Below are positions 1 through 61,467 of a stretch of 64,000 nucleotides of DNA, in pieces. The translations under genes were made by a program, and so were the position numbers. Under the pieces are notes generated by a model that worked only from the letters and a program-made list of their open reading frames with translations, had not been told where the DNA came from and did not search any database. Numbering within the stretch: position 1 is the stretch's first letter; each line of letters begins with the position of its first letter. The stretch is from IMG/VR virus record IMGVR_UViG_3300038465_000091, positions 62,001 to 126,000 of that record; one strand, written 5' to 3'.

Positions 1-158
1 GTTAGCTGGCACGCTGTTCTTTGCAGTCCCGAACTTCCTCCCCTGCGCTCAACGCCGGACTTGGTTGGGTATTTCACATCAACACTGCCGATGCGAATCT
101 TACACGCTTCCAAGCACAGGACGTATATCTACGCAGCAGCGGTCGTCCAATTCAACAC
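1..158 (-). ncRNA. rnpB: RNase P RNA (bacterial type), 5' portion; 3' part lies beyond the window start
   Basis: Minus strand reads GTGTTGAATTGGACGACCGCTGCTGCG...GCGCAGGGGAGGAAGTTCGGGACTGCAAAGAACAGCGTGCCAGCTAAC. This is colinear with the conserved bacterial RNase P 5' region (E. coli-type ...GGGGAGGAAAGTCCGGGCTCCATAGGGCAGGGTGCCAGGTAAC). P3 is closed by CTGCG/CGCAG, and the gene follows the tRNA cluster. Confidence 0.85.
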
Positions 159-234
159 AAATTTTCAAAGACCTAATAGACGATGCAAAAGCTTTGTTCT
201 GCACTCAATCACCCGATAAACTGGGCGATGATTT

Positions 235-309
235 TGGAGCACCCGGTCGGTGTCGAGCCGACTCATAATGGTTTTGCAGACCATTGCGTTCCCGTTTCGC
301 CACGGATGC
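235..309 (-). tRNA. tRNA-Cys(GCA)
   Basis: Cloverleaf GCATCCG...CGGGTGC-T-CCA; anticodon arm ATGGT-CTGCAAA-ACCAT; CCA encoded. Confidence 0.92.
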
Positions 310-313
310 AAAT

Positions 314-694
314 TTAAATGCGTTTCAATACCTGTGCTTCTTCAAAAGTCGCTAGGCGGTGATGATTAGCACAAAGCACATCACACTTTGCGGCTTCTCG
401 CTTCACTCGTACAAGGGACCAACCCTTCTTACGGGTTTCAGATAAATTCAGTTCTTTTGTCGCCCTATCGCGATGGGCAAAATCTAAACAGACTGGATGT
501 TCCCGCCATCCGCAAACTTTACAACCCATCTCCATTTTGTAAGCGTCCAGCCATTGACAAATAACGGCTATCCGCTTTTTATCATTCTTCCGCACCGCTT
601 TCAAGTGTCGTGCCTTCCGAACTGGATCGGCGTAATACCGCTTCCAGTACCCAGCACGATATTCCTTGCGCTTCTTGCAATCCTTCAACGGCAT
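314..694 (-). CDS. HNH-type (His-Me finger) endonuclease-like protein inserted in the tRNA cluster
   Basis: CKVCG...LDFAH...KCDVLCANHH motif; basic N-terminus; lies between two tRNA genes. Confidence 0.75.
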   Translation of the reverse strand: MPLKDCKKRKEYRAGYWKRYYADPVRKARHLKAVRKNDKKRIAVICQWLDAYKMEMGCKVCGWREHPVCLDFAHRDRATKELNLSETRKKGWSLVRVKREAAKCDVLCANHHRLATFEEAQVLKRI

Positions 695-699
695 AAATT

Positions 700-773
700 T
701 GGCGGGGATACGGAGAATTGAACTCCGATTTTATGATAGACAGTCAAATGTCCTACCCTTGAACGATATCCCC
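700..773 (-). tRNA. tRNA-Asp(GTC)
   Basis: GGGGATA/TATCCCC acceptor, G73, CCA; anticodon loop CT-GTC-TA. Confidence 0.9.
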
Positions 774-785
774 GTTCTTAAATTT

Positions 786-860
786 TGGTGGACACGGGGG
801 GATTTGAACCCCTTCTTTCACTTTGCAAGAGTGACGCATTCCCAGTTATGCTACCGGCCC
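786..860 (-). tRNA. tRNA-Ala(TGC) with irregular (bulged) acceptor stem
   Basis: TCACT-CTTGCAA-AGTGA anticodon arm; G3:U70; A73; CCA. Confidence 0.85.
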
Positions 861-1075
861 ATTTTTGCTGGTTTCGCGACACTCTTCGTGCCGTGTACCA
901 GATCAAACTCTAATTGCCGAACCACCATCAGGTCCATCTTGAACAGGGCTTCATCCTCGGTGTCGGCAGATGCGACTAGGCCGAGGGTGGGGTGAACCAC
1001 TTTGAATCCCCAATCATACCTCTCGACCTCCACGGTCGTTACCAGCTTGACGATGCGTTGTCTGTCGCGTTTCAT
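851..1075 (-). CDS. Small HicB-like (RNase H-fold antitoxin-like) protein
   Basis: ATG at 1075 after GGAG; VVHPTLGLVASADTEDEAL resembles the HicB P-x-L-x3-G/A-x-T-x-E-E-A signature. Confidence 0.45.
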   Translation of the reverse strand: MKRDRQRIVKLVTTVEVERYDWGFKVVHPTLGLVASADTEDEALFKMDLMVVRQLEFDLVHGTKSVAKPAKMGR

Positions 1076-1090
1076 CTTCTCTCCGAATCT

Positions 1091-1169
1091 TGGTACGCCG
1101 AGAGGGACTCGAACCCCCGATAATACTTGCTTGTAGGGCAAGTGGTTTCGCCGCTCACGCCATCGGCGT
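1091..1169 (-). tRNA. tRNA-Val(TAC)
   Basis: ACGCCGA/TCGGCGT acceptor, A73, CCA; anticodon arm CTTGC-CCTACAA-GCAAG; GGTTCGAGTCC T-arm. Confidence 0.9.
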
Positions 1170-1180
1170 AAATTTACCGC

Positions 1181-1214
1181 AAAAACAAAAAGGACGCCTT
1201 TTTAGGGGCGTCCT
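1181..1214 (-). terminator. Intrinsic terminator directly upstream of tRNA-Val (attenuator terminator)
   Basis: Minus strand AGGACGCC-CCTAAAAA-GGCGTCCT followed by TTTTGTTTTT. Confidence 0.85.
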
Positions 1215-1266
1215 CGGAATTCGTTGGTTTTAGGCTATTTAGCCACCCCAACCATCCAAGGACACC
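1207..1266 (-). promoter_or_regulatory. Antiterminator hairpin, mutually exclusive with the terminator
   Basis: GGTGTCCTTGGA (1255-1266, inside the leader ORF) pairs over 12 bp (2 G:U) with TCCGAGGACGCC (1207-1218), which contains the terminator 5' arm. The helix is extended by GTTGG/CCAAC and GGCTA/TAGCC. Confidence 0.8.
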
Positions 1267-1385
1267 ATATCTCCTACCGGCGCCGCGTCAGCGGCGACAG
1301 TACCGCGTTCGGCTGTACAAGCCGACAGGACCACGCCTGCACAGACGACCGTCACGACAACACCGTCTTGGAGAATGGAGTTCAT
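1239..1385 (-). CDS. Putative attenuator leader peptide (48 aa; Val/Ala/Gly/Asp/Cys-rich)
   Basis: MNSILQDGVVVTVVCAGVVLSACTAERGTVAADAAPVGDMVSLDGWGG*; the stop codon lies inside the antiterminator hairpin. Confidence 0.7.
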   Translation of the reverse strand: MNSILQDGVVVTVVCAGVVLSACTAERGTVAADAAPVGDMVSLDGWGG

Positions 1386-1397
1386 AAGCGTCTCTAT

Positions 1398-1427
1398 TTA
1401 CAATACTCGGTATTCAGGAAACTTGCA
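1398..1427 (-). promoter_or_regulatory. Sigma70-like promoter for the leader/tRNA operon
   Basis: Minus strand TTGCAA-17 nt-TATTGT, 12 nt upstream of the leader ATG. Confidence 0.55.
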
Positions 1428-1451
1428 ACAACTATTTTTCAGAAAAGTTTG

Positions 1452-1525
1452 AGGGCGCAACCACGGACGAACCGTGTGATCTTCTGTCTTGCTACGGCTA
1501 TCAGCCGCCTTCCGAACTGCGCCCC
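1452..1525 (-). ncRNA. Unidentified small structured RNA
   Basis: Closing stem GGGCGCA/TGCGCCC with internal hairpins CGGCT-GAT-AGCCG and CACGG-TTCGT-CCGTG. Confidence 0.4.
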
Positions 1526-1537
1526 GATGAAAATACA

Positions 1538-1688
1538 TCGGCTACAGTAACCCTGCACGTTGAACTGGTGCCAGCTAGAGTTCGGGACCGTTGCCACCGT
1601 TGCACCTGAGGTACACCGGATTATGCGGGTCATGACTCCCGTGACAGTGGGTTTTAGCCCTAGCCAGCCGTGCACAGTATGCAGCCGA
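1538..1688 (-). ncRNA. Unidentified ~150-nt rod-like structured RNA
   Basis: Nested helices TCGGCTGCA/TGTAGCCGA, TGCACG/CGTGCA, GCTAGGG/CTCTAGC, TGTCAC/GTGGCA; immediately downstream of tRNA-Ala. Confidence 0.5.
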
Positions 1689-1700
1689 ATCTCAAAATTT

Positions 1701-1775
1701 TGGTGGACCTAGAGGGAATTGAACCCCCGACATCAGCCTTGCAAAGGCTGCGTTCTCCCGCTGAACTATAGGCCC
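1701..1775 (-). tRNA. tRNA-Ala(TGC)
   Basis: GGGCCTA/TAGGTCC acceptor with G3:U70; CAGCC-TTTGCAA-GGCTG anticodon arm; CCA. Confidence 0.95.
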
Positions 1776-4637: not shown

Positions 4638-6908
4638 TTATATCCATTTATACTGGAATTCGAGCGGCAACGGTGTGTGTTTTTGTAATTCCCCTAGAAA
4701 AGTTGGAGGCACTAACCCAGAAAACTCACACTGCCCCCCAGCGCAGGCCGATGTTTCCTCTATGGTGGTGGTATCTTCGTCCTCTATCAACTGACTATAA
4801 TCGACCACTACGGTCTCACGGCGCAAATCACACCAGAGCTTCCAGTTATTCACCTCTTTCAAACAGTAGCTCATGCGCCGAAGATCACCTTCGAAATATC
4901 GTTCGGCAAATTGTTTCGCCCGGCGAACCCAGTCAATCTGTTCGAGGGTAAACTTTTCGGATTCGGGAATGGCACCTAAAGCCGCGTCACACGCTTTCCA
5001 CAAATCGTCTGGGAAAACATGAAGTCCATCGACAATTAACCCCGAAGCCATCAGGCTACCGTCGCCATACATTCGAGCAATCTCCGTTGGGGTGTGGATA
5101 GCTAGAAATGGGGCCTGACGATAATCCAAATCCCCCATGTCCGACAACAAAGACACTCCCGCAAGATGCTCGCGGTTTTCGTAGATGAACCCTTCGACCG
5201 CATCCCATTCATCGGCTCTAACGTTGATCGTATTGGAAACGTTATGACGGAGCCACGGGGCGGTGCAGCGTTCAAGCACCTTGCCAGCCGCTACCCAATT
5301 TTGCTGGGTCAAACAGACGTGCTCCAATTGCGTGCGGGCGTTCTCCCCATCTTTCGTTTTTGCCGATTCACGAGTTTCGATGCAAAAGGAAATTATGCTG
5401 TCAGTGCCGTTCGCGCTCCAGAAACTCTTTTCGACGGCGCGAGGATTGTGCTTCTTGAAAAACAAGTATGGAGCTTCCAACTCGTTTGCCTGCACCCTGC
5501 GGATGTACCGCTTGGCGTGATGGAAATGGACGCCGCTGGATGTACCCAGCAGACACGCGGAATTTCCTGAGGGCTTCACGCAAGTGCTTCTGGCGGATGG
5601 GTTGATTCCAAGTTTCCGAGCAATATCCTCATTGACACTCACGACCAGTTGTGCCATTTCGCGCTGGGTCTCGGGGTTGAAAAGCACCTCAGGATTTTCC
5701 ATCATTCCTGTGATGGAAACCCCCAGAAGGGCCTCTCGTTCCACTATTCGCTTTGTTGCCTCTCCCAGATACGGGAAGTCTGTGTAAGCCGCCTGCAACG
5801 TGCCTATGATGGCACCCGCCCGTGCTGCTATGGCAAAATCTTCTTTGGTGCGGCATTTACCGCCATTGATTTCACACAAGTTGCAGAATGCCCAACCCGA
5901 TTCGCCTGTTGTGATATCGAGTGGGTACATTCCGATTTCCACACAAGGATTGAAGAGCATTTCCGTGGAATCGGACCACACAAACCCGGGCTCTCCGAAC
6001 TGCTTCACCGAACTCATGAATGCATGGAATTGTTCGCGTGTCGTGTCCGAGCGCAGAAGCAGGACGCTGTTGTTAGACCGCCCTCGCTGGGGATCGGTAT
6101 ACGACCAAGAACCTGTTTTGGCATTCAACATCAGATCGTCGTCAGGTGAGAAAACACAGATGGTAGCCGACCGTCTCACCCCGCCACTGAGCACCGCATC
6201 GCTGGCGTGCATCACCAGATCATAAGCGTCGATGGTACGCAATTTGGTTTGTCCGTTGCTGATGCAACGATCAAGCAACCCACGTATATTCTCCAAGGAT
6301 TTCTTGAGAGGTTCTGGGCCGGGAGCTTTACCGACGCCCGAAGAAAGATAACTCCCCTTCGGTCGGATTTTGCTATAATCAAATTTGACCGTAGTTCCAA
6401 GCCATTCCATCAGACCATCAGATGGGAAGTAGCTCGCAAGTAGTACACCGAGAGCGTCAGCCCAACCTTCGATTGAGTCTGGAATCGTGAACACTTTCTC
6501 GGGGAAAGACCCACCATTCATGCGGGAAGACAAAAAACTCGGAAGTTTGGCGATATGGTGTTTTTGTACTGAGAACCCCACACCACAACCACTTAGCAGG
6601 AGCCACAAAGCTTCTTGGAAAAATTTGATGCGGTCGCAGTAGGACACAACGCAGTTGTACATTCGGGCGTTGTTGCGGAGGATAGGTCGCCCGCCGTATT
6701 GAAGGGCTCTCTGAGAGCCTAGAACGCGCTTAGCCCTCACTTGGTTAAATGCCCATCGAATCTCTTCTTCGACCTGTGGGAAACGGTCTAAGTGCATTTG
6801 TTGCACACGGTCAACGGCTTCGTGCCAAATTTCTCGACGTTTCGTTGCTTGATCGTAACGGGCGTACTTTGAATTGAAGGTATAATCTTGTAGTGCTTTG
6901 ATGGACAT
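4638..6908 (-). CDS. nrdJ: Class II (adenosylcobalamin-dependent) ribonucleotide reductase
   Basis: YNC, GCGVGFSV, SGGVRRSA, NPCVEI, CNLCEING, TCVKPSG and C-terminal CAGGQCE redox pair; no adjacent beta-subunit gene. Confidence 0.9.
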   Translation of the reverse strand: MSIKALQDYTFNSKYARYDQATKRREIWHEAVDRVQQMHLDRFPQVEEEIRWAFNQVRAKRVLGSQRALQYGGRPILRNNARMYNCVVSYCDRIKFFQEALWLLLSGCGVGFSVQKHHIAKLPSFLSSRMNGGSFPEKVFTIPDSIEGWADALGVLLASYFPSDGLMEWLGTTVKFDYSKIRPKGSYLSSGVGKAPGPEPLKKSLENIRGLLDRCISNGQTKLRTIDAYDLVMHASDAVLSGGVRRSATICVFSPDDDLMLNAKTGSWSYTDPQRGRSNNSVLLLRSDTTREQFHAFMSSVKQFGEPGFVWSDSTEMLFNPCVEIGMYPLDITTGESGWAFCNLCEINGGKCRTKEDFAIAARAGAIIGTLQAAYTDFPYLGEATKRIVEREALLGVSITGMMENPEVLFNPETQREMAQLVVSVNEDIARKLGINPSARSTCVKPSGNSACLLGTSSGVHFHHAKRYIRRVQANELEAPYLFFKKHNPRAVEKSFWSANGTDSIISFCIETRESAKTKDGENARTQLEHVCLTQQNWVAAGKVLERCTAPWLRHNVSNTINVRADEWDAVEGFIYENREHLAGVSLLSDMGDLDYRQAPFLAIHTPTEIARMYGDGSLMASGLIVDGLHVFPDDLWKACDAALGAIPESEKFTLEQIDWVRRAKQFAERYFEGDLRRMSYCLKEVNNWKLWCDLRRETVVVDYSQLIEDEDTTTIEETSACAGGQCEFSGLVPPTFLGELQKHTPLPLEFQYKWI

Positions 6909-8268: not shown

Positions 8269-8724
8269 TTACTTTCCGTGCGCTACTGCGCTCTTTGCGT
8301 CTTCTGCTTGCAGTGGGTTCGGTTCAGGTTCGGTTCGGTTTGCTTCGGTTGTCCCGAGTGGCAGGTTCAATTTCACATCAATACTGAGAAAATGAAGCTT
8401 GCGGTTGTGCACCCTCCCTGTAAGGTCGCTGCACTGGCACTGCGGTTTTACTGCATTCCAACAGCGATGGCACTGTATACATGCTAGAGTTTTACTGTAA
8501 GTTTGCAGGAACTTTACAGTAGTTCTGTAGTCAGCTTTGATGTCCTTGGACAGCTTCCATGGGTCACGTGGTACATCTCCGAATACCCATTGTTGGAGGA
8601 GTATTTCGAGGAATATACCGCGCTGTGCCATAGTCATACTTCGGACATCTGGGTCGCTAAGCCAATCCTGCCAGATGATCGGTAGGTATGGCGGCACTCG
8701 GTCGAGTTTGTCTTGTTTACTCAT
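8269..8724 (-). CDS. YdaU/DUF1376-like phage replication initiator (N-terminal HTH) with Cys cluster
   Basis: PYLPIIWQDWLSDPDVRSMTMAQRGIFLEILLQQW matches the DUF1376 pattern; lies between helicase and loader. Confidence 0.7.
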   Translation of the reverse strand: MSKQDKLDRVPPYLPIIWQDWLSDPDVRSMTMAQRGIFLEILLQQWVFGDVPRDPWKLSKDIKADYRTTVKFLQTYSKTLACIQCHRCWNAVKPQCQCSDLTGRVHNRKLHFLSIDVKLNLPLGTTEANRTEPEPNPLQAEDAKSAVAHGK

Positions 8725-10330
8725 CTTCCAGCCCTACGTCAACGATGTCGGTTCGTGTGGTCGGGGGGCTCGTGCGTACGTCGTCATCGGTCATGAACTT
8801 CTCTGTTGACGCCGTTCCCCCGGTGACACCCGAGCCGATTTTCTCAACCACTCGTCCTGATCCGGGTGTGATTTCCATAAGAGCGAGCGGTGGTCGCTTC
8901 CCCTTGCGTACTTTGAGAGTTTCCATGATGAGTTCGTTCTTGCTCTTCATCTTCTCGTCCGAGTACACGGAAAAAATATAATCCATGTCATGTTGATACT
9001 CAGAAAAGTTGGCGATAGCGTTGAGATCGTAGAACGTACTGCCTTCATTGTTGGTGCTTTCTTCCTTTTCGGAGGCTTTCTTTGCCGCTTTGTTGGCCTC
9101 ACGGTTGACCTGCATTGGAGTTGCAACCACAAGCCCGCGACCATTATGGTAGTTGCGGGTGAGAATTTGAGTTTTGTGGATGGTGTCCTTGGTCTCCTGA
9201 TCGCGATAGCGGGAATCCCCCGCCGTAGCGAAACGGGCAAGATAATCGACCACAGCGAAATGGTAGTTTCCCTGATCGGCGAATGCTTCCAAATAGCCGA
9301 CGAAAGCTTCGAATGTGTTGATGTTCACGCTGGCTTGCACGTCGAGATGACCCGGAAGATTGACGTTGGTTTTCATGTCCCGCAGGATGCGAGCCATGTG
9401 AGCCCTGTGTTCGGGTGAGATCGTGATGCCAGACTCTTCGTCTCGTGCCAAATCCCAATCCGATATGGATGGTAATTCGACACCACAATCCTCGTAGTCC
9501 CCGTGCGAAGAATGTAGGAACGCCATGAATTCCCAGATTTCAAGTGGTGCGTGCTCGAAGCTGATGTAGAGCCCGTTGAATCCCTGTTTCAACCAATTGT
9601 AAACAACGGTATTAAGGATGGTGGTCTTACCATCACCGCTCATTCCAGCGATACCAACGAAGCTTAGGTTTTGTGGCCCGATGATGATTGCTTTGTCTAC
9701 GTGGGGCATCAACGTTTTCATGCGGGTTGCGGTGTCTTCTTCGGCTAGGCGTTTGTCTAGAGATTCGGCAACGGCGTCTATGTGCTCATGTAGGTATCCA
9801 GACTCGATCTCGGTCTCGGTGTAGACATCATCCATGAGTTGTTTGAGTAAATAGGCTTTGGCGTCCTTGACTCCGCTGGGGTCTTTGAACTTCCCCGTCT
9901 GTTTCGTCGGCCCAGCGTTGACAACATCCTCGGAATGTTTGAGAGCAAACCGTATGTGGTCCTTCTCAGCCTCTTTGATGACGCTTTCAATCAGAACGTT
10001 GATGTCAGAGATGGACTTCAGGCGGGTCTCGTCGATGTCGTTCAGACCTTTGAGTGCCGCAACCAATGTTTCCGACCACCCCATCCGAAGTTCGTGCTCA
10101 TCGGACGTTTTTACGAAGTCGCGAAGTGCGTTTTTGTTCGGCGGGAGTTGATGGAAGCGTTCTGAGTATTGGATGATGATGTCGAGAATTTTGTAGCACT
10201 CGTCATCCTCCAACTTTGCCCAGTTGCAGATTTTCTTTAGGGGTTTTGTGTTTTTACGGAGAACATCGAGGAGAGTTTGGTCTCCCGAGAGGAGGCGGTA
10301 CACCAATACATCGATTTTTACTTCGTTCAC
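8717..10330 (-). CDS. DnaB-like (SF4) replicative helicase
   Basis: AGMSGDGKT Walker A, YISFE, VVDYL, PMQVNR, KVRKG. Confidence 0.88.
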   Translation of the reverse strand: MNEVKIDVLVYRLLSGDQTLLDVLRKNTKPLKKICNWAKLEDDECYKILDIIIQYSERFHQLPPNKNALRDFVKTSDEHELRMGWSETLVAALKGLNDIDETRLKSISDINVLIESVIKEAEKDHIRFALKHSEDVVNAGPTKQTGKFKDPSGVKDAKAYLLKQLMDDVYTETEIESGYLHEHIDAVAESLDKRLAEEDTATRMKTLMPHVDKAIIIGPQNLSFVGIAGMSGDGKTTILNTVVYNWLKQGFNGLYISFEHAPLEIWEFMAFLHSSHGDYEDCGVELPSISDWDLARDEESGITISPEHRAHMARILRDMKTNVNLPGHLDVQASVNINTFEAFVGYLEAFADQGNYHFAVVDYLARFATAGDSRYRDQETKDTIHKTQILTRNYHNGRGLVVATPMQVNREANKAAKKASEKEESTNNEGSTFYDLNAIANFSEYQHDMDYIFSVYSDEKMKSKNELIMETLKVRKGKRPPLALMEITPGSGRVVEKIGSGVTGGTASTEKFMTDDDVRTSPPTTRTDIVDVGLEDE

Positions 10331-43666: not shown

Positions 43667-44974
43667 ATGGCGACCACGAATCCGTATAAGTACGCCTACC
43701 CGGGTCCACCGTTCAATTGGCTCGGGCATGTCTCCGAAACTCAGTTCAAAGCCTTTCAAAGTTGGTACACAGCTTTGAATATCAGTGCGCCCGCGTCTTC
43801 CGCCGCCACGTCTCCCGGAAGCACGAGCACAAATCCCGCCGCCCCGCCGGGCGCGGGAACCACCACTCCCATAACCCCACAGTCGAATTCGTCAACCACC
43901 AATGCAGCGGCTCTGGCTGCGACCATCGTCAAGAATTTCGAAGGATTCAGTGCAACAGCATATCCCGATCCTGCGGGACAGACGAAAACGTATTCCATTG
44001 GGTATGGGCATCAGATTGTTCCGGGTGATGGGCTTTCTACGTCATCGGTAGTGACGATGGATCAAGCGAATACGCTTTTGATGTCCGACCTGTCGGCGTC
44101 GATCAATACCGTCAACAATTCCGTAATGTCGCCGACACCCTTGGAGCCCACTCAGACGGCGGCTTTAGTCTCGCTGGCGTACAACATCGGCGGCACTGCT
44201 TTTAAGAATTCTACACTGGTTTCTGATCTCAACAGCGGCAATACGGCTGCGGCAGCGGCTCAATTTAACAACTGGGTGTACGCTGGCGGGACTGTAAATT
44301 CGTCGTTGGTTGCTCGGCGTACACAGGAGCAAGCACTTTTCAGCACGGGCGTCATCCTAAGCAACTCGGGCAACCCGACCGTCAACGCCGCCAATGCCGC
44401 CAACAGCGGTGGGTCGATGACCACCCAGCTTCATTACCAGATTCGTGCTCAGCAGTTACGGAAGACCGCAGGAGCTTTGGAACAGTACTACCAAACGGTG
44501 AATGAAATCTCGCTAGGCGTGCTGACTCCATCGTTTGCAAAAGCCGCATGGCAACCACCTACGGGCGGGTACTTCCAGTACGCTCATCGGGACGATCACC
44601 TACCGATGGTTGCAATGGGGCAGGTCAAGACCTACCTGAAGGATCGGCTCCAACGTCAGGATGAAGCGGTTTTTCACATGAATCATGCTCGCAATATCAT
44701 TGAAAAGATTGAAGATAAGGCACAATATCAAGCGGATGCTAAGACCCAAATCCCCAACTTAATCGCTCAAATCAACGGCTATTTTGCTCTCCCGCAGTAT
44801 GCTCCCGTGCTGGTTAAAGATCAAACTGATGTATACCCAACGGATAGCACAACACCCAGATATCGAGTTCACGAACTCGATAATCCGACCATTTTCGAAC
44901 TCGAACAACACGGTCGTGCTCTCCCGGGAGGTCCAGTTGATCTGAAGGAAACACCACAACCCGCTACTGGCTAG
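43667..44974 (+). CDS. Baseplate-associated protein with inserted GH24 phage-lysozyme domain
   Basis: FEGFSATAYPDPAG...SIGYGH...ALVSLAYNIG...LVARRTQE. Confidence 0.85.
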   Translation: MATTNPYKYAYPGPPFNWLGHVSETQFKAFQSWYTALNISAPASSAATSPGSTSTNPAAPPGAGTTTPITPQSNSSTTNAAALAATIVKNFEGFSATAYPDPAGQTKTYSIGYGHQIVPGDGLSTSSVVTMDQANTLLMSDLSASINTVNNSVMSPTPLEPTQTAALVSLAYNIGGTAFKNSTLVSDLNSGNTAAAAAQFNNWVYAGGTVNSSLVARRTQEQALFSTGVILSNSGNPTVNAANAANSGGSMTTQLHYQIRAQQLRKTAGALEQYYQTVNEISLGVLTPSFAKAAWQPPTGGYFQYAHRDDHLPMVAMGQVKTYLKDRLQRQDEAVFHMNHARNIIEKIEDKAQYQADAKTQIPNLIAQINGYFALPQYAPVLVKDQTDVYPTDSTTPRYRVHELDNPTIFELEQHGRALPGGPVDLKETPQPATG

Positions 44975-56140: not shown

Positions 56141-57013
56141 ATGGACAATGTAGAATGCGGGGATAGTTTAGCGGTAAAACAGCCGACCCAATCGGAAATC
56201 GGGGGTTCAAATCCAGCCTCTCCGCTCCAATCTGCACGCCAACTTGCCGAGCAACGATTCAAGACCAATCCAGTAATGTGTTTCCAGCGACATCTAATTG
56301 AAGCTTCCGCCGAGCTTAATCCTCGGGAAAAATACCCTAAAGAATTCCTGCTTCACGAAGGTGTGCGGGAGATCACTCGTGCTGAGTGTGCGACATTCAT
56401 TGAGCAGTATGAATACCTCGGCACCCTCGGTCGCGGTAGCGTGTACTACGGGTTGTTCATGCCGAATGGCGAGATGGTTGGGGCCAACTGCTTCTGCACA
56501 AGTGGCGGCGGGATTGGGAACATTTGTGGGCCTGAGTACGCGGGTAAGACCGCTAACCTAGCCCGTGGGTGTTGTGTCCTCCACGCCCCCGTCAACGCGG
56601 GCTCGTTCTTTACTGCTCGTTCAATCAAGATGGCGTATGCGAAATACGGATGGCAAGTGTACTTTGCTTACAGTGACCCCAACGCCAGTGAGAACGGCAA
56701 GCTTTACAAAATCCTGAACTGGTACTATCTTGGCGCGGGCCTCAACCATAGTGGCGGGCATAGTGACTGGTATAAGGACGGCAACAGGATCAAAAGCTAC
56801 GCCGTGTTCCGCGATGGCGGCAAGGCCCTAGTGAAGTACGGCTATGAGCCGGGCACAGGCGGGCAATGGGCGTGGCTGCGAGCTAATGGTTGGGAGCAGA
56901 GAATTGATCCCGACAAAGGGAAATTCTGCTGGTTTGAGGGCAACAAACGCGAAGTACGAGCCGCAAAAGCGGCGTGTCGCTACCCCCTTGATCTACCATT
57001 CCCAGAAAAATAA
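56141..57013 (+). CDS. mom: Mom-like (GNAT-fold) DNA adenine modification protein
   Basis: VREI...FIEQYEYLG...YYGLF...LARGCC...PVNAGSFF...AYSDP...GKLYK..NWYYLG. Confidence 0.75.
   Translation: MDNVECGDSLAVKQPTQSEIGGSNPASPLQSARQLAEQRFKTNPVMCFQRHLIEASAELNPREKYPKEFLLHEGVREITRAECATFIEQYEYLGTLGRGSVYYGLFMPNGEMVGANCFCTSGGGIGNICGPEYAGKTANLARGCCVLHAPVNAGSFFTARSIKMAYAKYGWQVYFAYSDPNASENGKLYKILNWYYLGAGLNHSGGHSDWYKDGNRIKSYAVFRDGGKALVKYGYEPGTGGQWAWLRANGWEQRIDPDKGKFCWFEGNKREVRAAKAACRYPLDLPFPEK
56157..56229 (+). ncRNA. tRNA-Gly-like element embedded in frame in the 5' end of the mom-like gene
   Basis: GCGGGGA/TCTCCGC acceptor, U73, CCA; D-arm GTTT-AGCGGTA-AAAC; T-loop GGTTCAAATCC; shortened anticodon arm CCGA-CCCAA-TCGG. 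Confidence 0.8.
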
Positions 57014-61069: not shown

Positions 61070-61120
61070 GAAGTTAAATATTCCTAGCCAAAATCCTCAG
61101 ACTTCTGGTATCATGTAATA

Positions 61121-61390
61121 GATGGTCGTAAGCCCCGCAAGGGGTAAAAGGCACTGGTACTGATTTTCAGACAGGGGTTCGACTCCCCTCAGGTCCACCA
61201 TAAATTTTTGCACCACCTTATGGGCCTGCCCCGGTTTCGATGGAGACGGTATGGGATGGCAGCCAGCGACCCGAGCGCAAGGGTGTACCCTCGTTAAACA
61301 GGCATTCAAAAAAGTAAACGCTGAAGCTCCAAAGGCTTTCGCTGCTCATGCTTAATGAGCCAGACCCCGTGGGTCTGTTCCTCAACACGG
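61121..61390 (+). ncRNA. ssrA: Circularly permuted two-piece tmRNA; tag (A)AEAPKAFAAHA
   Basis: Acceptor piece ends ...GACAGGGGTTCGACTCCCCTCAGGTCCACCA (61200). A 21-nt spacer follows, then the coding piece starts GGGCCTG (61222), which pairs with CAGGTCC (G3:U70). Tag ORF at 61320-61355 follows GTAAAC. Outer boundaries are approximate. Confidence 0.9.
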
Positions 61391-61396
61391 CAAGAA

Positions 61397-61422
61397 CGCC
61401 CGCGCAAGCGGGCATTTTTGTT
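61397..61422 (+). terminator. Intrinsic terminator after tmRNA
   Basis: GCCCGC-GCAA-GCGGGC-ATTTTTG. Confidence 0.8.
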
Positions 61423-61467
61423 TCTGGTTGACAATCTGAATTCCAAAGGCTAGTATAGGGGCACATT

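What the first reader, a model, noticed from the sequence alone, without database searches (positions are those of the whole stretch)
1..158. Phage-encoded RNase P RNA with a variant P4 motif and a long P3
Seen: a clear RNase P 5' region on the minus strand, with GAGGAAGTTC in place of the canonical GAGGAAAGTC and about 90 nt enclosed by P3. It sits at the distal end of the attenuated tRNA operon. Established: RNase P matures tRNA and tmRNA 5' ends and is uncommon in phages. Inference: the phage supplies its own ribozyme to process its tRNAs, two-piece tmRNA and tRNA mimics. Only the 5' ~160 nt are visible here.
Basis: partly seen in the sequence, partly recalled or inferred. Interest (0 to 1): 0.72.

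Follow-up and report, generated by a model that had tools for sequence, protein, structure and literature searches.

The report
Phage-encoded, expressed RNase P ribozyme
A huge peat-soil phage carries a complete RNase P RNA (the ribozyme that trims tRNA 5' ends) inside its tRNA gene cluster; the RNA is abundant in metatranscriptomes and belongs to a large phage family, apparently undescribed, marked by an altered but still base-paired catalytic helix P4.

Summary
Window 162..1 (minus strand) is the 5' 162 nt of a ~421-nt bacterial type-A RNase P RNA (RPR). It continues 259 nt beyond the window edge in the same 223.5-kb IMG/VR virus record.

- **Model match:** Rfam RF00010 scores 139.4 bits (cut-off 100), E 5e-44, over the full model.
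- **P4 variant:** GAGGAAGUUC is at window 40-31. The 3' strand (UCCCGGCUA) compensates: A67-U359 becomes G-C, C71-G356 becomes G-C, and G68-C358 becomes U.G. Helix length and the bulged U are kept.
- **Long P3:** it is 101 nt and present in the RNA. Its 62-nt core is about 91% identical to a module at the tip of P12 in related phage RPRs.
- **Structure:** across 19 relatives, 96% of base-pair cells are canonical and 50 of 80 pairs show compensatory changes. P13/P14 are absent.
- **Expression:** four peat metatranscriptomes give high-depth contigs that match the RPR with no differences, three of them confined to it.
- **Distribution:** the same P4 signature defines 64 distinct RPRs in viral and metagenome contigs. 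No cellular rnpB among 185,579 species genomes has it; the only three bacterial hits are MAG contigs.
- **Protein subunit:** no phage RnpA was found.
- **Correction:** the gene lies mid-cluster, not at the distal end. Eight more tRNAs follow, the first 7 nt after the P1 3' strand.

Catalysis and substrates remain untested.

The parts
1..162 (-). 5' 162 nt of the ~421-nt phage RNase P RNA. The remaining 259 nt lie just outside the window, at G000:C1:61742-62000 (L001:1242-1500).
   Evidence: RF00010 full-length hit, 139.4 bits, E 5e-44. P1/P2 pairing sets the 5' end at window 162. An RNA contig ends at L001 1662 = window 162.
151..162 (-). P1 5' strand (AUUUGUGUUGAA). It pairs with UUCAACACGAAU at L001 1253-1242.
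   Evidence: 12 contiguous pairs. In 19 relatives, 98% of cells are canonical and 8 of 12 pairs show compensatory change.
142..150 (-). P2 5' strand (UUGGACGAC). It pairs with GUCGUCCAA immediately after the GGAAUG of J18/2.
   Evidence: 9 perfect pairs. 3 of 9 pairs covary in relatives.
41..141 (-). Expanded P3 (101 nt). The basal helix is CUGCG (window 136-132) paired with CGCAG (window 47-43).
   Evidence: MFE -37.1 kcal/mol, z -2.1. Relative L288 shows compensatory swaps in the basal helix and in the GCUUGG/CCAAGU helix. An RNA contig covers it without any joint.
57..118 (-). 62-nt structured module inside P3: a basal GCUUGG/CCAAGU helix, internal loops and an 11-bp apical hairpin. In relatives L237, L274, L242 and L281 the same module sits at the tip of P12.
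   Evidence: 90-92% identity. Local alignment score 94-99 against at most 29 for 200 shuffles.
27..40 (-). CR-I and P4 5' strand, GAGGAAGUUCGGGA (E. coli numbering A66 G67 U68 [U69] C70 G71 G72 G73 A74).
   Evidence: It pairs with UCCCGGCU (U353-U360) at L001 1266-1259. 100% of P4 cells are canonical in 19 relatives.
1..26 (-). 5' strands of P5 (window 26-23), pseudoknot P6 (GAAC, 19-16), P7 (14-10) and P8 (9-5), plus the P8 loop (4-1).
   Evidence: Model alignment. Covariation includes P6 GAAC/GUUC changing to GGAC/GUCC.
163..234 (-). Leader between tRNA-Cys and the RPR: two hairpins, then a motif (UAUUAGGUCUUUGAAA) conserved directly before P1 in relatives.
   Evidence: Whether it is a promoter (-10-like) or a processing site is unresolved. 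The promoter scan was not above shuffles.
235..309 (-). tRNA-Cys(GCA), the gene immediately upstream on the same strand, with encoded CCA.
   Evidence: ARAGORN and RF00005, 52.2 bits.
317..694 (-). 126-aa HNH-like endonuclease ORF inside the tRNA cluster.
   Evidence: 36% identical (E 2e-12) to the ORF inserted in the RPR of relative L030. No Pfam hit at 1e-3.
700..1775 (-). Upstream tRNA genes on the same strand: Asp 700-773, Ala 786-860, Val 1091-1169, Ala 1701-1775. These are candidate substrates.
61104..61446 (+). Permuted (two-piece) tmRNA gene, a possible further substrate. No link to the RPR was tested.
   Evidence: RF04321, 69.7 bits against a cut-off of 47, and ARAGORN.

Best explanation
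**What it is.** This is a functional, phage-encoded catalytic RNA subunit of RNase P, derived from the bacterial type-A form.

**How it most likely works**
1. It is transcribed with the phage tRNA array, possibly also from a promoter of its own just upstream.
2. It is released as a stable ~420-nt RNA. The 3' side is probably freed by RNase P cleavage at the 5' end of tRNA-Gly(UCC), which starts 7 nt after the P1 3' strand.
3. It folds into the standard P1-P12, P15-P19 architecture with both pseudoknots (P4 and P6).
4. It assembles with the host RnpA protein, since the phage has none detectable.
5. It cleaves the 5' leaders of the phage's roughly 37 CCA-encoding pre-tRNAs, and perhaps the pre-tmRNA. 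This would secure tRNA maturation during infection.

**Shown**
- Identity and completeness.
- Structure supported by covariation.
- Intact core motifs.
- A compensated P4.
- Expression as an abundant discrete RNA.
- Genomic embedding in tRNA arrays.
- Membership of a phage-restricted family.

**Inferred**
- Catalysis.
- Use of host RnpA.
- The substrates.
- The processing route.
For: **Identity**
- RF00010 matches full length at 139.4 bits.

**Core motifs, all present**
- CR-I.
- ACAGAGA (J11/12).
- GGGUGAAA (J12/13).
- AAAUAGG (the CCA-binding L15).
- GNRA loops on P9 and P18.
- CCUAGAGGAAUG.
- ACAAAAUCCCGGCUA (CR-V).

**P4**
- It keeps 8 pairs plus the bulged U.
- Every change is paired or wobble.
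- Further covariation occurs in the family: 74/353 switches between G-C and A-U, and 71/356 goes from G-C to A-U.

**Covariation**
- In 19 distinct relatives, 96.4% of 80 projected pairs are canonical and 50 of 80 pairs show compensatory change.
- With shifted partners the figures are 34-43% and 6-15 pairs.

**Expression**
- X16: a 388-nt contig, depth 180, no differences.
- X9: depths 328 and 33, with one contig ending at L001 1662.
- X13: depth 12.8.
- X7: depth 78.8.
- Flanks are at 0-22.

**Context**
- The neighbouring tRNA genes read by eye (Cys, Asp, Ala, Val in the window, Gly downstream) encode CCA.
- A tRNA starts 0-10 nt after the model-defined 3' end of the RPR here and in four relatives.

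**Phage setting**
- The DNA is held in at least six independent peat or permafrost DNA runs.
- Relatives include complete 350-360-kb virus genomes.
Against: - No activity data exist.
- No RnpA was found in the record, which is only 71% complete, nor in three relatives at least 90% complete. A protein partner is therefore assumed.
- P13/P14 are missing and P12 is only 4 bp, so the specificity domain is weakened.
- G74 is A in this member, paired with U353. By my recollection of the universal consensus, G74 is conserved.
- All four RNA contigs stop at L001 1262-1264, inside the P4 3' strand and 20 nt short of the predicted end. Contigs cannot define ends, but if this were the true 3' end the RNA could not form P4.
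- Contig depth is a poor measure of expression, and DNA carry-over cannot be formally excluded. A 10- to 100-fold excess over the flanks argues against it.
Confidence: 0.75

Rival explanations
1. It is a non-catalytic decoy or sponge. The RNA keeps the fold needed to bind host RnpA or pre-tRNAs, and acts by sequestering them. This would shut down or redirect host tRNA maturation rather than cleave anything itself.
For: No phage RnpA was found, so the RNA must compete for the host protein. It is very abundant. P4, the catalytic helix, is the one core element that differs from all cellular RPRs. A virus-encoded RNase P-like RNA without activity has been reported for camelpox (PMC3001073).
Against: The P4 changes are compensated and fall at positions that, by my recollection, vary across the domains of life. 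The bulged U, C70, A65/A66, the CCA-binding L15 and the T-loop-binding junctions are all conserved across 19-64 divergent members. That is more constraint than a protein sponge would need. A phage with 37 tRNA genes of its own would also harm itself by blocking RNase P.
Confidence: 0.1
2. It is an active RNase P with altered specificity. Its main job would be something other than bulk pre-tRNA trimming, for example processing the two-piece tmRNA precursor or phage polycistronic mRNAs, or cleaving host RNAs.
For: The specificity domain is reduced (no P13/P14, mini P12). The periphery is remodelled: a 62-nt module has moved from P12 to P3. A permuted tmRNA gene is in the same genome. Some family members lack the S-domain altogether, with total lengths of 202-250 nt.
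Against: The T-loop-recognition junction sequences and the CCA-binding loop are retained. The gene sits among tRNA genes in many relatives. No substrate evidence exists either way.
Confidence: 0.1
3. It is a decaying host-derived passenger gene, an assembly chimera or bacterial contamination of the virus record.
For: IMG/VR does contain host rnpB genes at the edges of small proviral contigs (334 bits, canonical P4). My searches for terminase and capsid Pfam families in this record found nothing.
Against: - The region is held entire in at least four independent DNA runs.
- The gene is syntenic, with the same tRNA order, in relative G008, whose helicase is 84% identical.
- The helices covary, and the RNA is expressed.
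- The P4 signature is absent from cellular rnpB.
- The MAGs that hold it also have a canonical rnpB on another contig.
- The window also encodes an endolysin-domain protein, a Mom-family protein, a class II RNR and many large ORFans.
Confidence: 0.03

Closest known systems
Bacterial type-A RNase P RNA (Rfam RF00010; E. coli M1 RNA, Thermotoga maritima RPR)
   Same: The architecture is shared: P1-P12, P15-P19, the P4 and P6 pseudoknots, CR-I to CR-V, GNRA loops on P9 and P18, and the CCA-binding L15. The score is above the family cut-off.
   Different: - It is encoded by a phage, inside a tRNA array.
- P4 has G67-C359, U68.G358 and G71-C356, where the E. coli sequence and the Rfam consensus have A-U, G-C and C-G.
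- There is no P13/P14, and P12 is 4 bp.
- P3 is 101 nt.
- There is an extra GNRA hairpin after P17.
- No cognate RnpA gene is present.
Reduced or diverged RPRs of CPR bacteria (PMC8172020)
   Same: Loss of P13/P14 and large helix extensions also occur there, and those RNAs likewise need manual refolding after cmsearch.
   Different: Those are the cell's only rnpB. I did not check their P4 sequences. This one is an extra, viral copy with a clade-specific P4.
Canonical-P4 RPR genes inside other huge-phage records of IMG/VR
   Same: Full-length RF00010 hits (166-308 bits) lie deep inside complete virus genomes. G031 also shares a helicase homologue with this phage at 28% identity.
   Different: They keep GAGGAAAGUCCGGG. 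They are either separate acquisitions or the ancestral state. I did not analyse them further.
Translation-related gene sets of huge phages (tRNAs, tmRNA, SmpB, release factors; Al-Shayeb et al. 2020, PMC7162821)
   Same: The biological theme is the same: large phages bringing their own translation-supply genes.
   Different: That paper does not mention RNase P. A ribozyme for tRNA maturation would be an added layer.
[quoted passage not shown]
   Same: It is a virus-encoded RNA with RPR-like secondary structure.
   Different: It has only partial resemblance and no pre-tRNA processing activity was reported. Here the full model is matched and all core motifs are present.
Phage T4 tRNA gene cluster with co-transcribed small stable RNAs, matured by host RNase P (my own knowledge, not checked here)
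   Same: Stable non-tRNA RNAs are embedded in a phage tRNA operon and released by tRNA-processing enzymes.
   Different: T4 depends on host RNase P and does not encode the ribozyme.

Membership tests
Bacterial RNase P RNA class A (RF00010) | Covariance-model score at or above the curated gathering score, over the full model. | tested here: met
   139.4 bits against 100, model positions 1-367, E 5e-44.
Bacterial RNase P RNA class A (RF00010) | P4 pseudoknot between CR-I and CR-V with a bulged U. | tested here: met
   8 pairs plus a bulged U. Three pairs differ from E. coli and the Rfam consensus, and all remain paired or wobble. 100% of cells are canonical in 19 relatives, with covariation at 71/356 and 74/353.
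Bacterial RNase P RNA class A (RF00010) | The near-invariant bacterial P4 sequence GAGGAAAGUCCGGG / CCCGGCUUA. | tested here: not met
   It reads GAGGAAGUUCGGGA / UCCCGGCUA. The variant occurs in no cellular rnpB found among 185,579 species genomes.
Bacterial RNase P RNA class A (RF00010) | P1-P2-P3 stack closing the molecule. | tested here: met
   P1 has 12 bp and P2 has 9 bp, contiguous, and both covary. P3 is present but expanded to 101 nt.
Bacterial RNase P RNA class A (RF00010) | P15-L15 (GG for the tRNA 3'-CCA), P16, P17 and the P6 pseudoknot. These are the type-A hallmarks that distinguish it from type B. | tested here: met
   AAAUAGG is present. P15, P16 and P17 covary. P6 changes from GAAC/GUUC to GGAC/GUCC.
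Bacterial RNase P RNA class A (RF00010) | Specificity domain with the P7-P11 cruciform and the J11/12 and J12/13 conserved junctions. | tested here: met
   P7-P11 are paired and covary. ACAGAGA and GGGUGAAA are present.
Bacterial RNase P RNA class A (RF00010) | P13 and P14. | tested here: not met
   All 43 model positions are deleted. The OWN-type relatives whose sequences were printed read GUGAAACG(A/G)GCAAUCU with nothing between (the 19-sequence set was not inspected for this). Such loss is reported as not unusual in some bacteria (PMC8172020).
Bacterial RNase P RNA class A (RF00010) | Pre-tRNA 5'-leader cleavage activity. | not testable with these tools
   This needs an in vitro or complementation assay.
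Bacterial RNase P holoenzyme | A cognate RnpA protein (PF00825) encoded by the same genome. | tested here: not met
   No hit in G000 (71% complete) or in five relatives, three of them at least 90% complete. Controls were positive.
Expressed stable RNA | A discrete, abundant transcript matching the gene. | tested here: met
   Four metatranscriptomes give contig depths of 12.8-328 over L001 1262-1662 against 0-22 in the flanks, with no joints. Exact ends were not determined.

The most novel reading that the evidence does not exclude
The GUUC-type RPRs would be an old lineage of RNase P restricted to viruses. Its fixed P4 signature and its stripped or reshuffled periphery would be adaptations rather than drift.

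**Features that would then be adaptive**
- No P13/P14.
- A P12 module moved to P3.
- HNH genes inserted in the RNA.
- Members of only about 200 nt without a specificity domain.

**What the adaptation might be**
- Working with a different protein, or with none.
- Staying active while the phage disables or outcompetes the host enzyme.

The smallest members would then be the smallest bacterial-type RNase P ribozymes known.
Probability: 0.2. Interest if true: 0.93.

Novelty: new variant of a known kind. Interest (0 to 1): 0.84.

Why it matters
RNase P RNA is treated as a universal cellular housekeeping ribozyme. I found no report of a phage-encoded one:

- A 2024 comprehensive RNase P review does not mention one in the terms I searched.
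- The huge-phage survey does not mention RNase P.
- The GenBank phage collection gives no annotated phage RNase P RNA by blastn with three queries; the only matches are unannotated metagenome records and bacterial contigs filed as phage.

If the RNA is active, huge phages supply the maturation catalyst as well as tRNAs, tmRNA and translation factors. That extends how far a virus can take over translation.

The family also offers a natural experiment on the ribozyme core. A P4 helix with three altered pairs is fixed across 64 divergent RNAs. Peripheral modules are swapped between helices. Sizes range from about 200 to over 800 nt. All of this can be tested directly with standard RNase P assays.

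Tried and rejected
- **blastn of the RPR against GenBank phages:** no match. Canonical RPR queries hit only unannotated metagenome 'Bacteriophage sp.' records and bacterial contigs filed as phage.
- **The covariance model's own 5' boundary (window 86):** rejected in favour of window 162. The model's P1/P2 is mostly non-canonical, whereas the long form gives 21 perfect pairs, is chosen by the model in L028, and is covered by RNA.
- **My first reading of P4** (one A and one U deleted, leaving an A.A mismatch): rejected. An ungapped alignment gives the same helix length with compensatory swaps.
- **Bacterial genome scan for the P4 19-mer:** 102 hits, close to the roughly 70 expected by chance. 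Most are one conserved protein gene, and only 3 are RPR-like.
- **Phage hallmark searches:** Terminase_6N and Phage_capsid Pfam searches of the record found nothing. PHROGs on ten large ORFs gave only an endolysin domain. Phage identity therefore rests on other evidence.
- **Promoter and terminator scan of the locus:** not above shuffles for promoters.
- **RnpA searches:** negative.
- **Is the 62-nt P3 module a general mobile element?** It occurs once in the genome and only inside RPRs of other loci, with 0 IMG/VR hits for its conserved 21-mer.
- **My P1 helix-length test:** shuffled tails were too permissive (shuffle median 8 bp) to be useful. The column-wise covariation count replaced it.
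- **Host identification:** not achieved. The only hints are the two-piece tmRNA and an Alphaproteobacteria MAG bin that holds a related contig.

Full report
**1. What is in the window**

On the minus strand, GAGGAAGTTC lies at window 40-31. With the window alone, Rfam's class-A RNase P model gives only a 3'-truncated partial match (window 63-1, 17.3 bits, E 0.0016). Nothing reaches the gathering score.

The window is G000:C1:62001-126000 of a 223,506-bp IMG/VR virus record that CheckV estimates as 71% complete. When the adjoining DNA is added, RF00010 matches over its whole length: model positions 1-367, 139.4 bits against a cut-off of 100, E 5e-44, at G000:61741-62086 minus. It is the only such match in the record.

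**2. True boundaries and the long P3**

The model begins P1 at window 86, using a GUGUUGA copy at window 85-79. That leaves 11 of its 18 P1/P2 pairs non-canonical.

- A second GUGUUGA further 5' gives a much better solution. P1 at window 162-151 pairs with UUCAACACGAAU. P2 at window 150-142 pairs with GUCGUCCAA, directly after the GGAAUG junction. Together these are 21 contiguous pairs.
- That leaves 101 nt (window 141-41) for P3.
- In the closest relative (L028 = G008) the model itself picks the long form: 379 nt, 165 bits.
- Relative L288 carries compensatory swaps in the basal P3 helix (CUGCG/CGCAG becomes CCUCG/CGAGG) and in the inner GCUUGG/CCAAGU helix (which becomes GAUUGG/CCAAUU).
- RNA contigs cover P3 without any joint.

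The whole RNA is L001:1662-1242, about 421 nt.

**3. P4**

The alignment to E. coli needs no gaps.

- The 5' strand reads A66 G67 U68 [U69] C70 G71 G72 G73 A74.
- The 3' strand reads U353 C354 C355 C356 G357 G358 C359 U360.

Compared with E. coli (AAG[U]CCGGG / CCCGGCUU), the helix has the same eight pairs and the same bulged U.

| Pair (E. coli numbering) | E. coli | This RNA | Type of change |
|---|---|---|---|
| 67/359 | A-U | G-C | compensatory |
| 71/356 | C-G | G-C | compensatory flip |
| 68/358 | G-C | U.G | wobble |
| 74/353 | G-C | A-U | compensatory |

This is my reading.

By my recollection of the universal CR-I and CR-V consensus (GNAANNUCNGNG and ACNNNANNCNGNNUA), positions 67, 68 and 71 are the variable ones. 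A65, A66, U69, C70 and G72 are retained. This was not checked against a source here.

**4. Rest of the structure**

The model alignment and a projection of the helices onto relatives show:

- P5.
- The P6 pseudoknot (GAAC with GUUC in the P17 loop).
- P7, P8, and P9 with a GCAA loop.
- P10/P11.
- J11/12 ACAGAGA.
- A 4-bp P12.
- J12/13 GGGUGAAA.
- P15 with AAAUAGG (the loop that binds the tRNA 3'-CCA).
- P16 and P17.
- An extra GNRA-capped hairpin after P17, found only here and in the closest relatives.
- P18 with a GCGA loop.
- P19 with a GUAA loop.

P13 and P14 are absent: all 43 model positions are deleted.

I collected 19 distinct RPRs of this type from viral and metagenome contigs and aligned them with MAFFT. 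Projected from this RNA, 96.4% of cells in 80 base pairs are canonical, and 50 of the 80 pairs show a compensatory double change. Shifting the 3' partner by 1-3 columns gives 34-43% and 6-15 pairs. The structure was derived from one of these sequences, which favours the unshifted version somewhat. The margin is nevertheless large, and the pseudoknots P4 and P6 also covary.

Loss of P13/P14 is reported as not unusual in some bacteria (PMC8172020).

**5. Genomic setting**

The record has 37 tRNA genes and a two-piece tmRNA gene. The RPR is inside one same-strand tRNA array, not at its end.

- Upstream in the window: Ala, Val, Ala, Asp, an HNH-like ORF, then Cys.
- Downstream beyond the window: Gly(UCC), Gly, Ala, Glu, Val, Ala, Val, Glu.
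- tRNA-Gly(UCC) begins 7 nt after the P1 3' strand.

A tRNA starts 0-10 nt after the model-defined 3' end of the RPR in this phage and in L028, L029, L032 and L033. In L029 a tRNA also ends 10 nt before the RPR. The tRNA genes I read by eye (Cys, Asp, Ala and Val in the window, Gly downstream) encode CCA, which matches the retained L15.

No RnpA (PF00825) is detectable in this record or in five relatives, three of which are at least 90% complete. Positive controls worked.

**6. Expression**

The locus is held in full by several peat and permafrost DNA runs and in part by peat metatranscriptomes. I laid the contigs of four RNA runs on L001:1-3400.

| Run | Contig length (nt) | Word depth | L001 span | Note |
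|---|---|---|---|---|
| X16 | 388 | 180 | 1262-1649 | no differences |
| X9 | 178 | 328 | 1262-1439 | |
| X9 | 283 | 32.6 | 1410-1662 | ends exactly at the predicted 5' end |
| X13 | 320 | 12.8 | 1263-1560 | |
| X7 | 740 | 78.8 | 1264-2003 | runs on through tRNA-Cys into the HNH ORF |

- The flanks are at 0-22.
- No joints fall inside the RPR, so the long P3 is part of the RNA.
- Loose ends in X9 show that related RPR variants are also present in the RNA.
- Contigs carry no strand and do not define ends.

All four runs stop at 1262-1264, which is 20 nt short of the predicted 3' end and inside the P4 3' strand. I cannot explain this with the data available. Random-priming end loss or assembly tip-clipping are possible causes.

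**7. A phage family with this P4**

- The 19-mer GAGGAAGTTCGGGNCTNCA occurs in 24 IMG/VR contigs. In 22 of these records RF00010 finds a match spanning the whole model, at 26-165 bits and 202-650 nt. Only four exceed the cut-off.
- All share the 3' strand N-CCCGGCUA.
- With JGI metagenome contigs added (76 stretches), I count 64 distinct cores. Their P4-to-P4 spans run from 158 to 808 nt.
- Covariation within P4: pair 74/353 is G-C in 29 of the 64 cores and A-U in 20 for the two commonest strand combinations. Pair 71/356 is A-U instead of G-C in four.
- The carriers are large. Examples are G020 (350,089 bp, terminal repeats, 100% complete) and G009 (359,890 bp, 90% complete). Sizes implied by completeness for the others are mostly 200-400 kb.
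- They are not all close kin. The helicase at window 8720-10330 is 84% identical in G008 and 40% in G014, and is undetected in G009 and G020.

**8. Absent from cells**

The same pattern in one genome for each of 185,579 species gives 102 hits, near the roughly 70 expected by chance for 17 fixed bases in 596 Gb. Nearly all are one conserved protein gene or unrelated sequence. Only three have a P4 3' strand at the right distance, and all three are MAG contigs. Two of those MAGs also have a canonical rnpB (277 and 253 bits) on another contig. The variant copies therefore look like co-binned phage DNA.

Canonical-P4 RPRs do occur in IMG/VR in two settings:

- At the edges of small proviral contigs, where they are probably host flank (334 bits).
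- Deep inside huge-phage genomes: G031 (463 kb), G047 (369 kb with terminal repeats), G032 and G041.

RPR genes thus occur in more than one huge-phage lineage.

**9. The P3 expansion is a relocated module**

The 62 nt at window 118-57 are 90-92% identical to a segment at the tip of P12 in relatives L237, L274, L242 and L281. The local alignment score is 94-99, against at most 29 for 200 shuffles.

- Here P12 is a 16-nt hairpin and P3 is long.
- In L237, L274 and L242, P3 is short and P12 carries the module. L281 carries the module in P12 but also has a long P3 of unrelated sequence.
- The closest relatives (L010, L241, L294, L288) have a truncated form in P3.
- The module occurs nowhere else in the genome or in the other loci.

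Because it works from two different helices, a position-specific tertiary contact seems unlikely. A protein-binding or stabilising role is my guess only.

**10. Interpretation**

The best-supported reading is an active phage RNase P RNA. It would be made with the phage tRNAs, freed by tRNA-processing cuts, and used with host RnpA to mature phage tRNAs. Identity, structure, conservation, expression and context are shown. Catalysis, protein partner, substrates and processing are inferred.

- A decoy role or an altered specificity cannot be excluded.
- A passenger gene or a chimera is contradicted by synteny, covariation, expression and independent DNA runs.

**11. Literature**

In the held library I found no description of a phage-encoded RNase P RNA.

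- The huge-phage survey does not mention RNase P (PMC7162821).
- Neither does the phage G paper, the P finder paper or, for the terms I searched, a 2024 RNase P review.
- Phrase searches returned only the inactive camelpox RNase P-like RNA.
- Further searches gave nothing relevant.

Subscription journals are not covered, so prior description cannot be excluded.

Noticed in passing
L030:1501-2150 (minus), record G009, 359,890 bp: This relative's RPR is 650 nt because a 130-aa HNH endonuclease ORF (L030 1657-2049, minus) sits directly after GUGAAACG, where P13/P14 would be. The ORF is 36% identical (E 2e-12) to the ORF at window 317-694. I did not determine whether the insert is spliced out or tolerated.
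   Followed up: partly
L042/L043 (202 nt) and L034/L035/L037 (250 nt): Some family members are very small and appear to lack the specificity domain, yet they keep P1, P4 and the 3' core. L042/L043 carry a compensatory G-C to A-U change in P4 (GUUCAGGA / UCCUGGCU).
   Followed up: partly
IMG/VR records G031 (463 kb), G047 (369 kb, terminal repeats), G032, G041, G049, G054, G056: Other huge-phage records hold full-length RPR genes with the canonical P4, at 166-308 bits, far from contig ends. Their relation to the GUUC-type family was not analysed.
   Followed up: no
window 79-85 and 152-158 (minus): GUGUUGA occurs twice, once as part of the P1 5' strand and once inside the apical hairpin of the P3 module. 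The second copy misleads the covariance model into a short P1. An alternative pairing is conceivable but was not tested.
   Followed up: partly
L001 1262-1264 (about 238 nt beyond the window edge): RNA-derived contigs from all four metatranscriptomes stop within 3 nt of each other inside the P4 3' strand, 20 nt before the predicted 3' end. The cause is unknown.
   Followed up: no
window 163-185 (minus): A leader motif, TAT(A/T)(T/G)TAGG(T/C)CTTTGAAA, directly precedes P1 in this RPR and in relatives, even where the P1 sequence differs. It may be a -10-like promoter element or a processing site.
   Followed up: no
window 1190-1215 (minus): A terminator-like hairpin (9 pairs, followed by a T-rich tail) lies just upstream of tRNA-Val inside the tRNA array.
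   Followed up: no
G000:C1:129385-129543 (outside the window): ARAGORN calls a tRNA with anticodon CUA (labelled Pyl) and next to it a tRNA with a four-base anticodon. This may point to amber suppression or recoding in this phage.
   Followed up: no
window 61104-61446 (+): A permuted two-piece tmRNA gene (RF04321, 69.7 bits) with predicted tag peptide AEAPKAFAAHA. By my recollection, two-piece tmRNAs are typical of Alphaproteobacteria, some Betaproteobacteria and cyanobacteria, which is a weak host hint.
   Followed up: no
window 4641-6908 (-), 43667-44971 (+), 56141-57010 (+): A class II ribonucleotide reductase insertion domain, an endolysin-domain protein and a Mom-family protein. Eight other ORFs of 376-1302 aa have no PHROG match.
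   Followed up: partly
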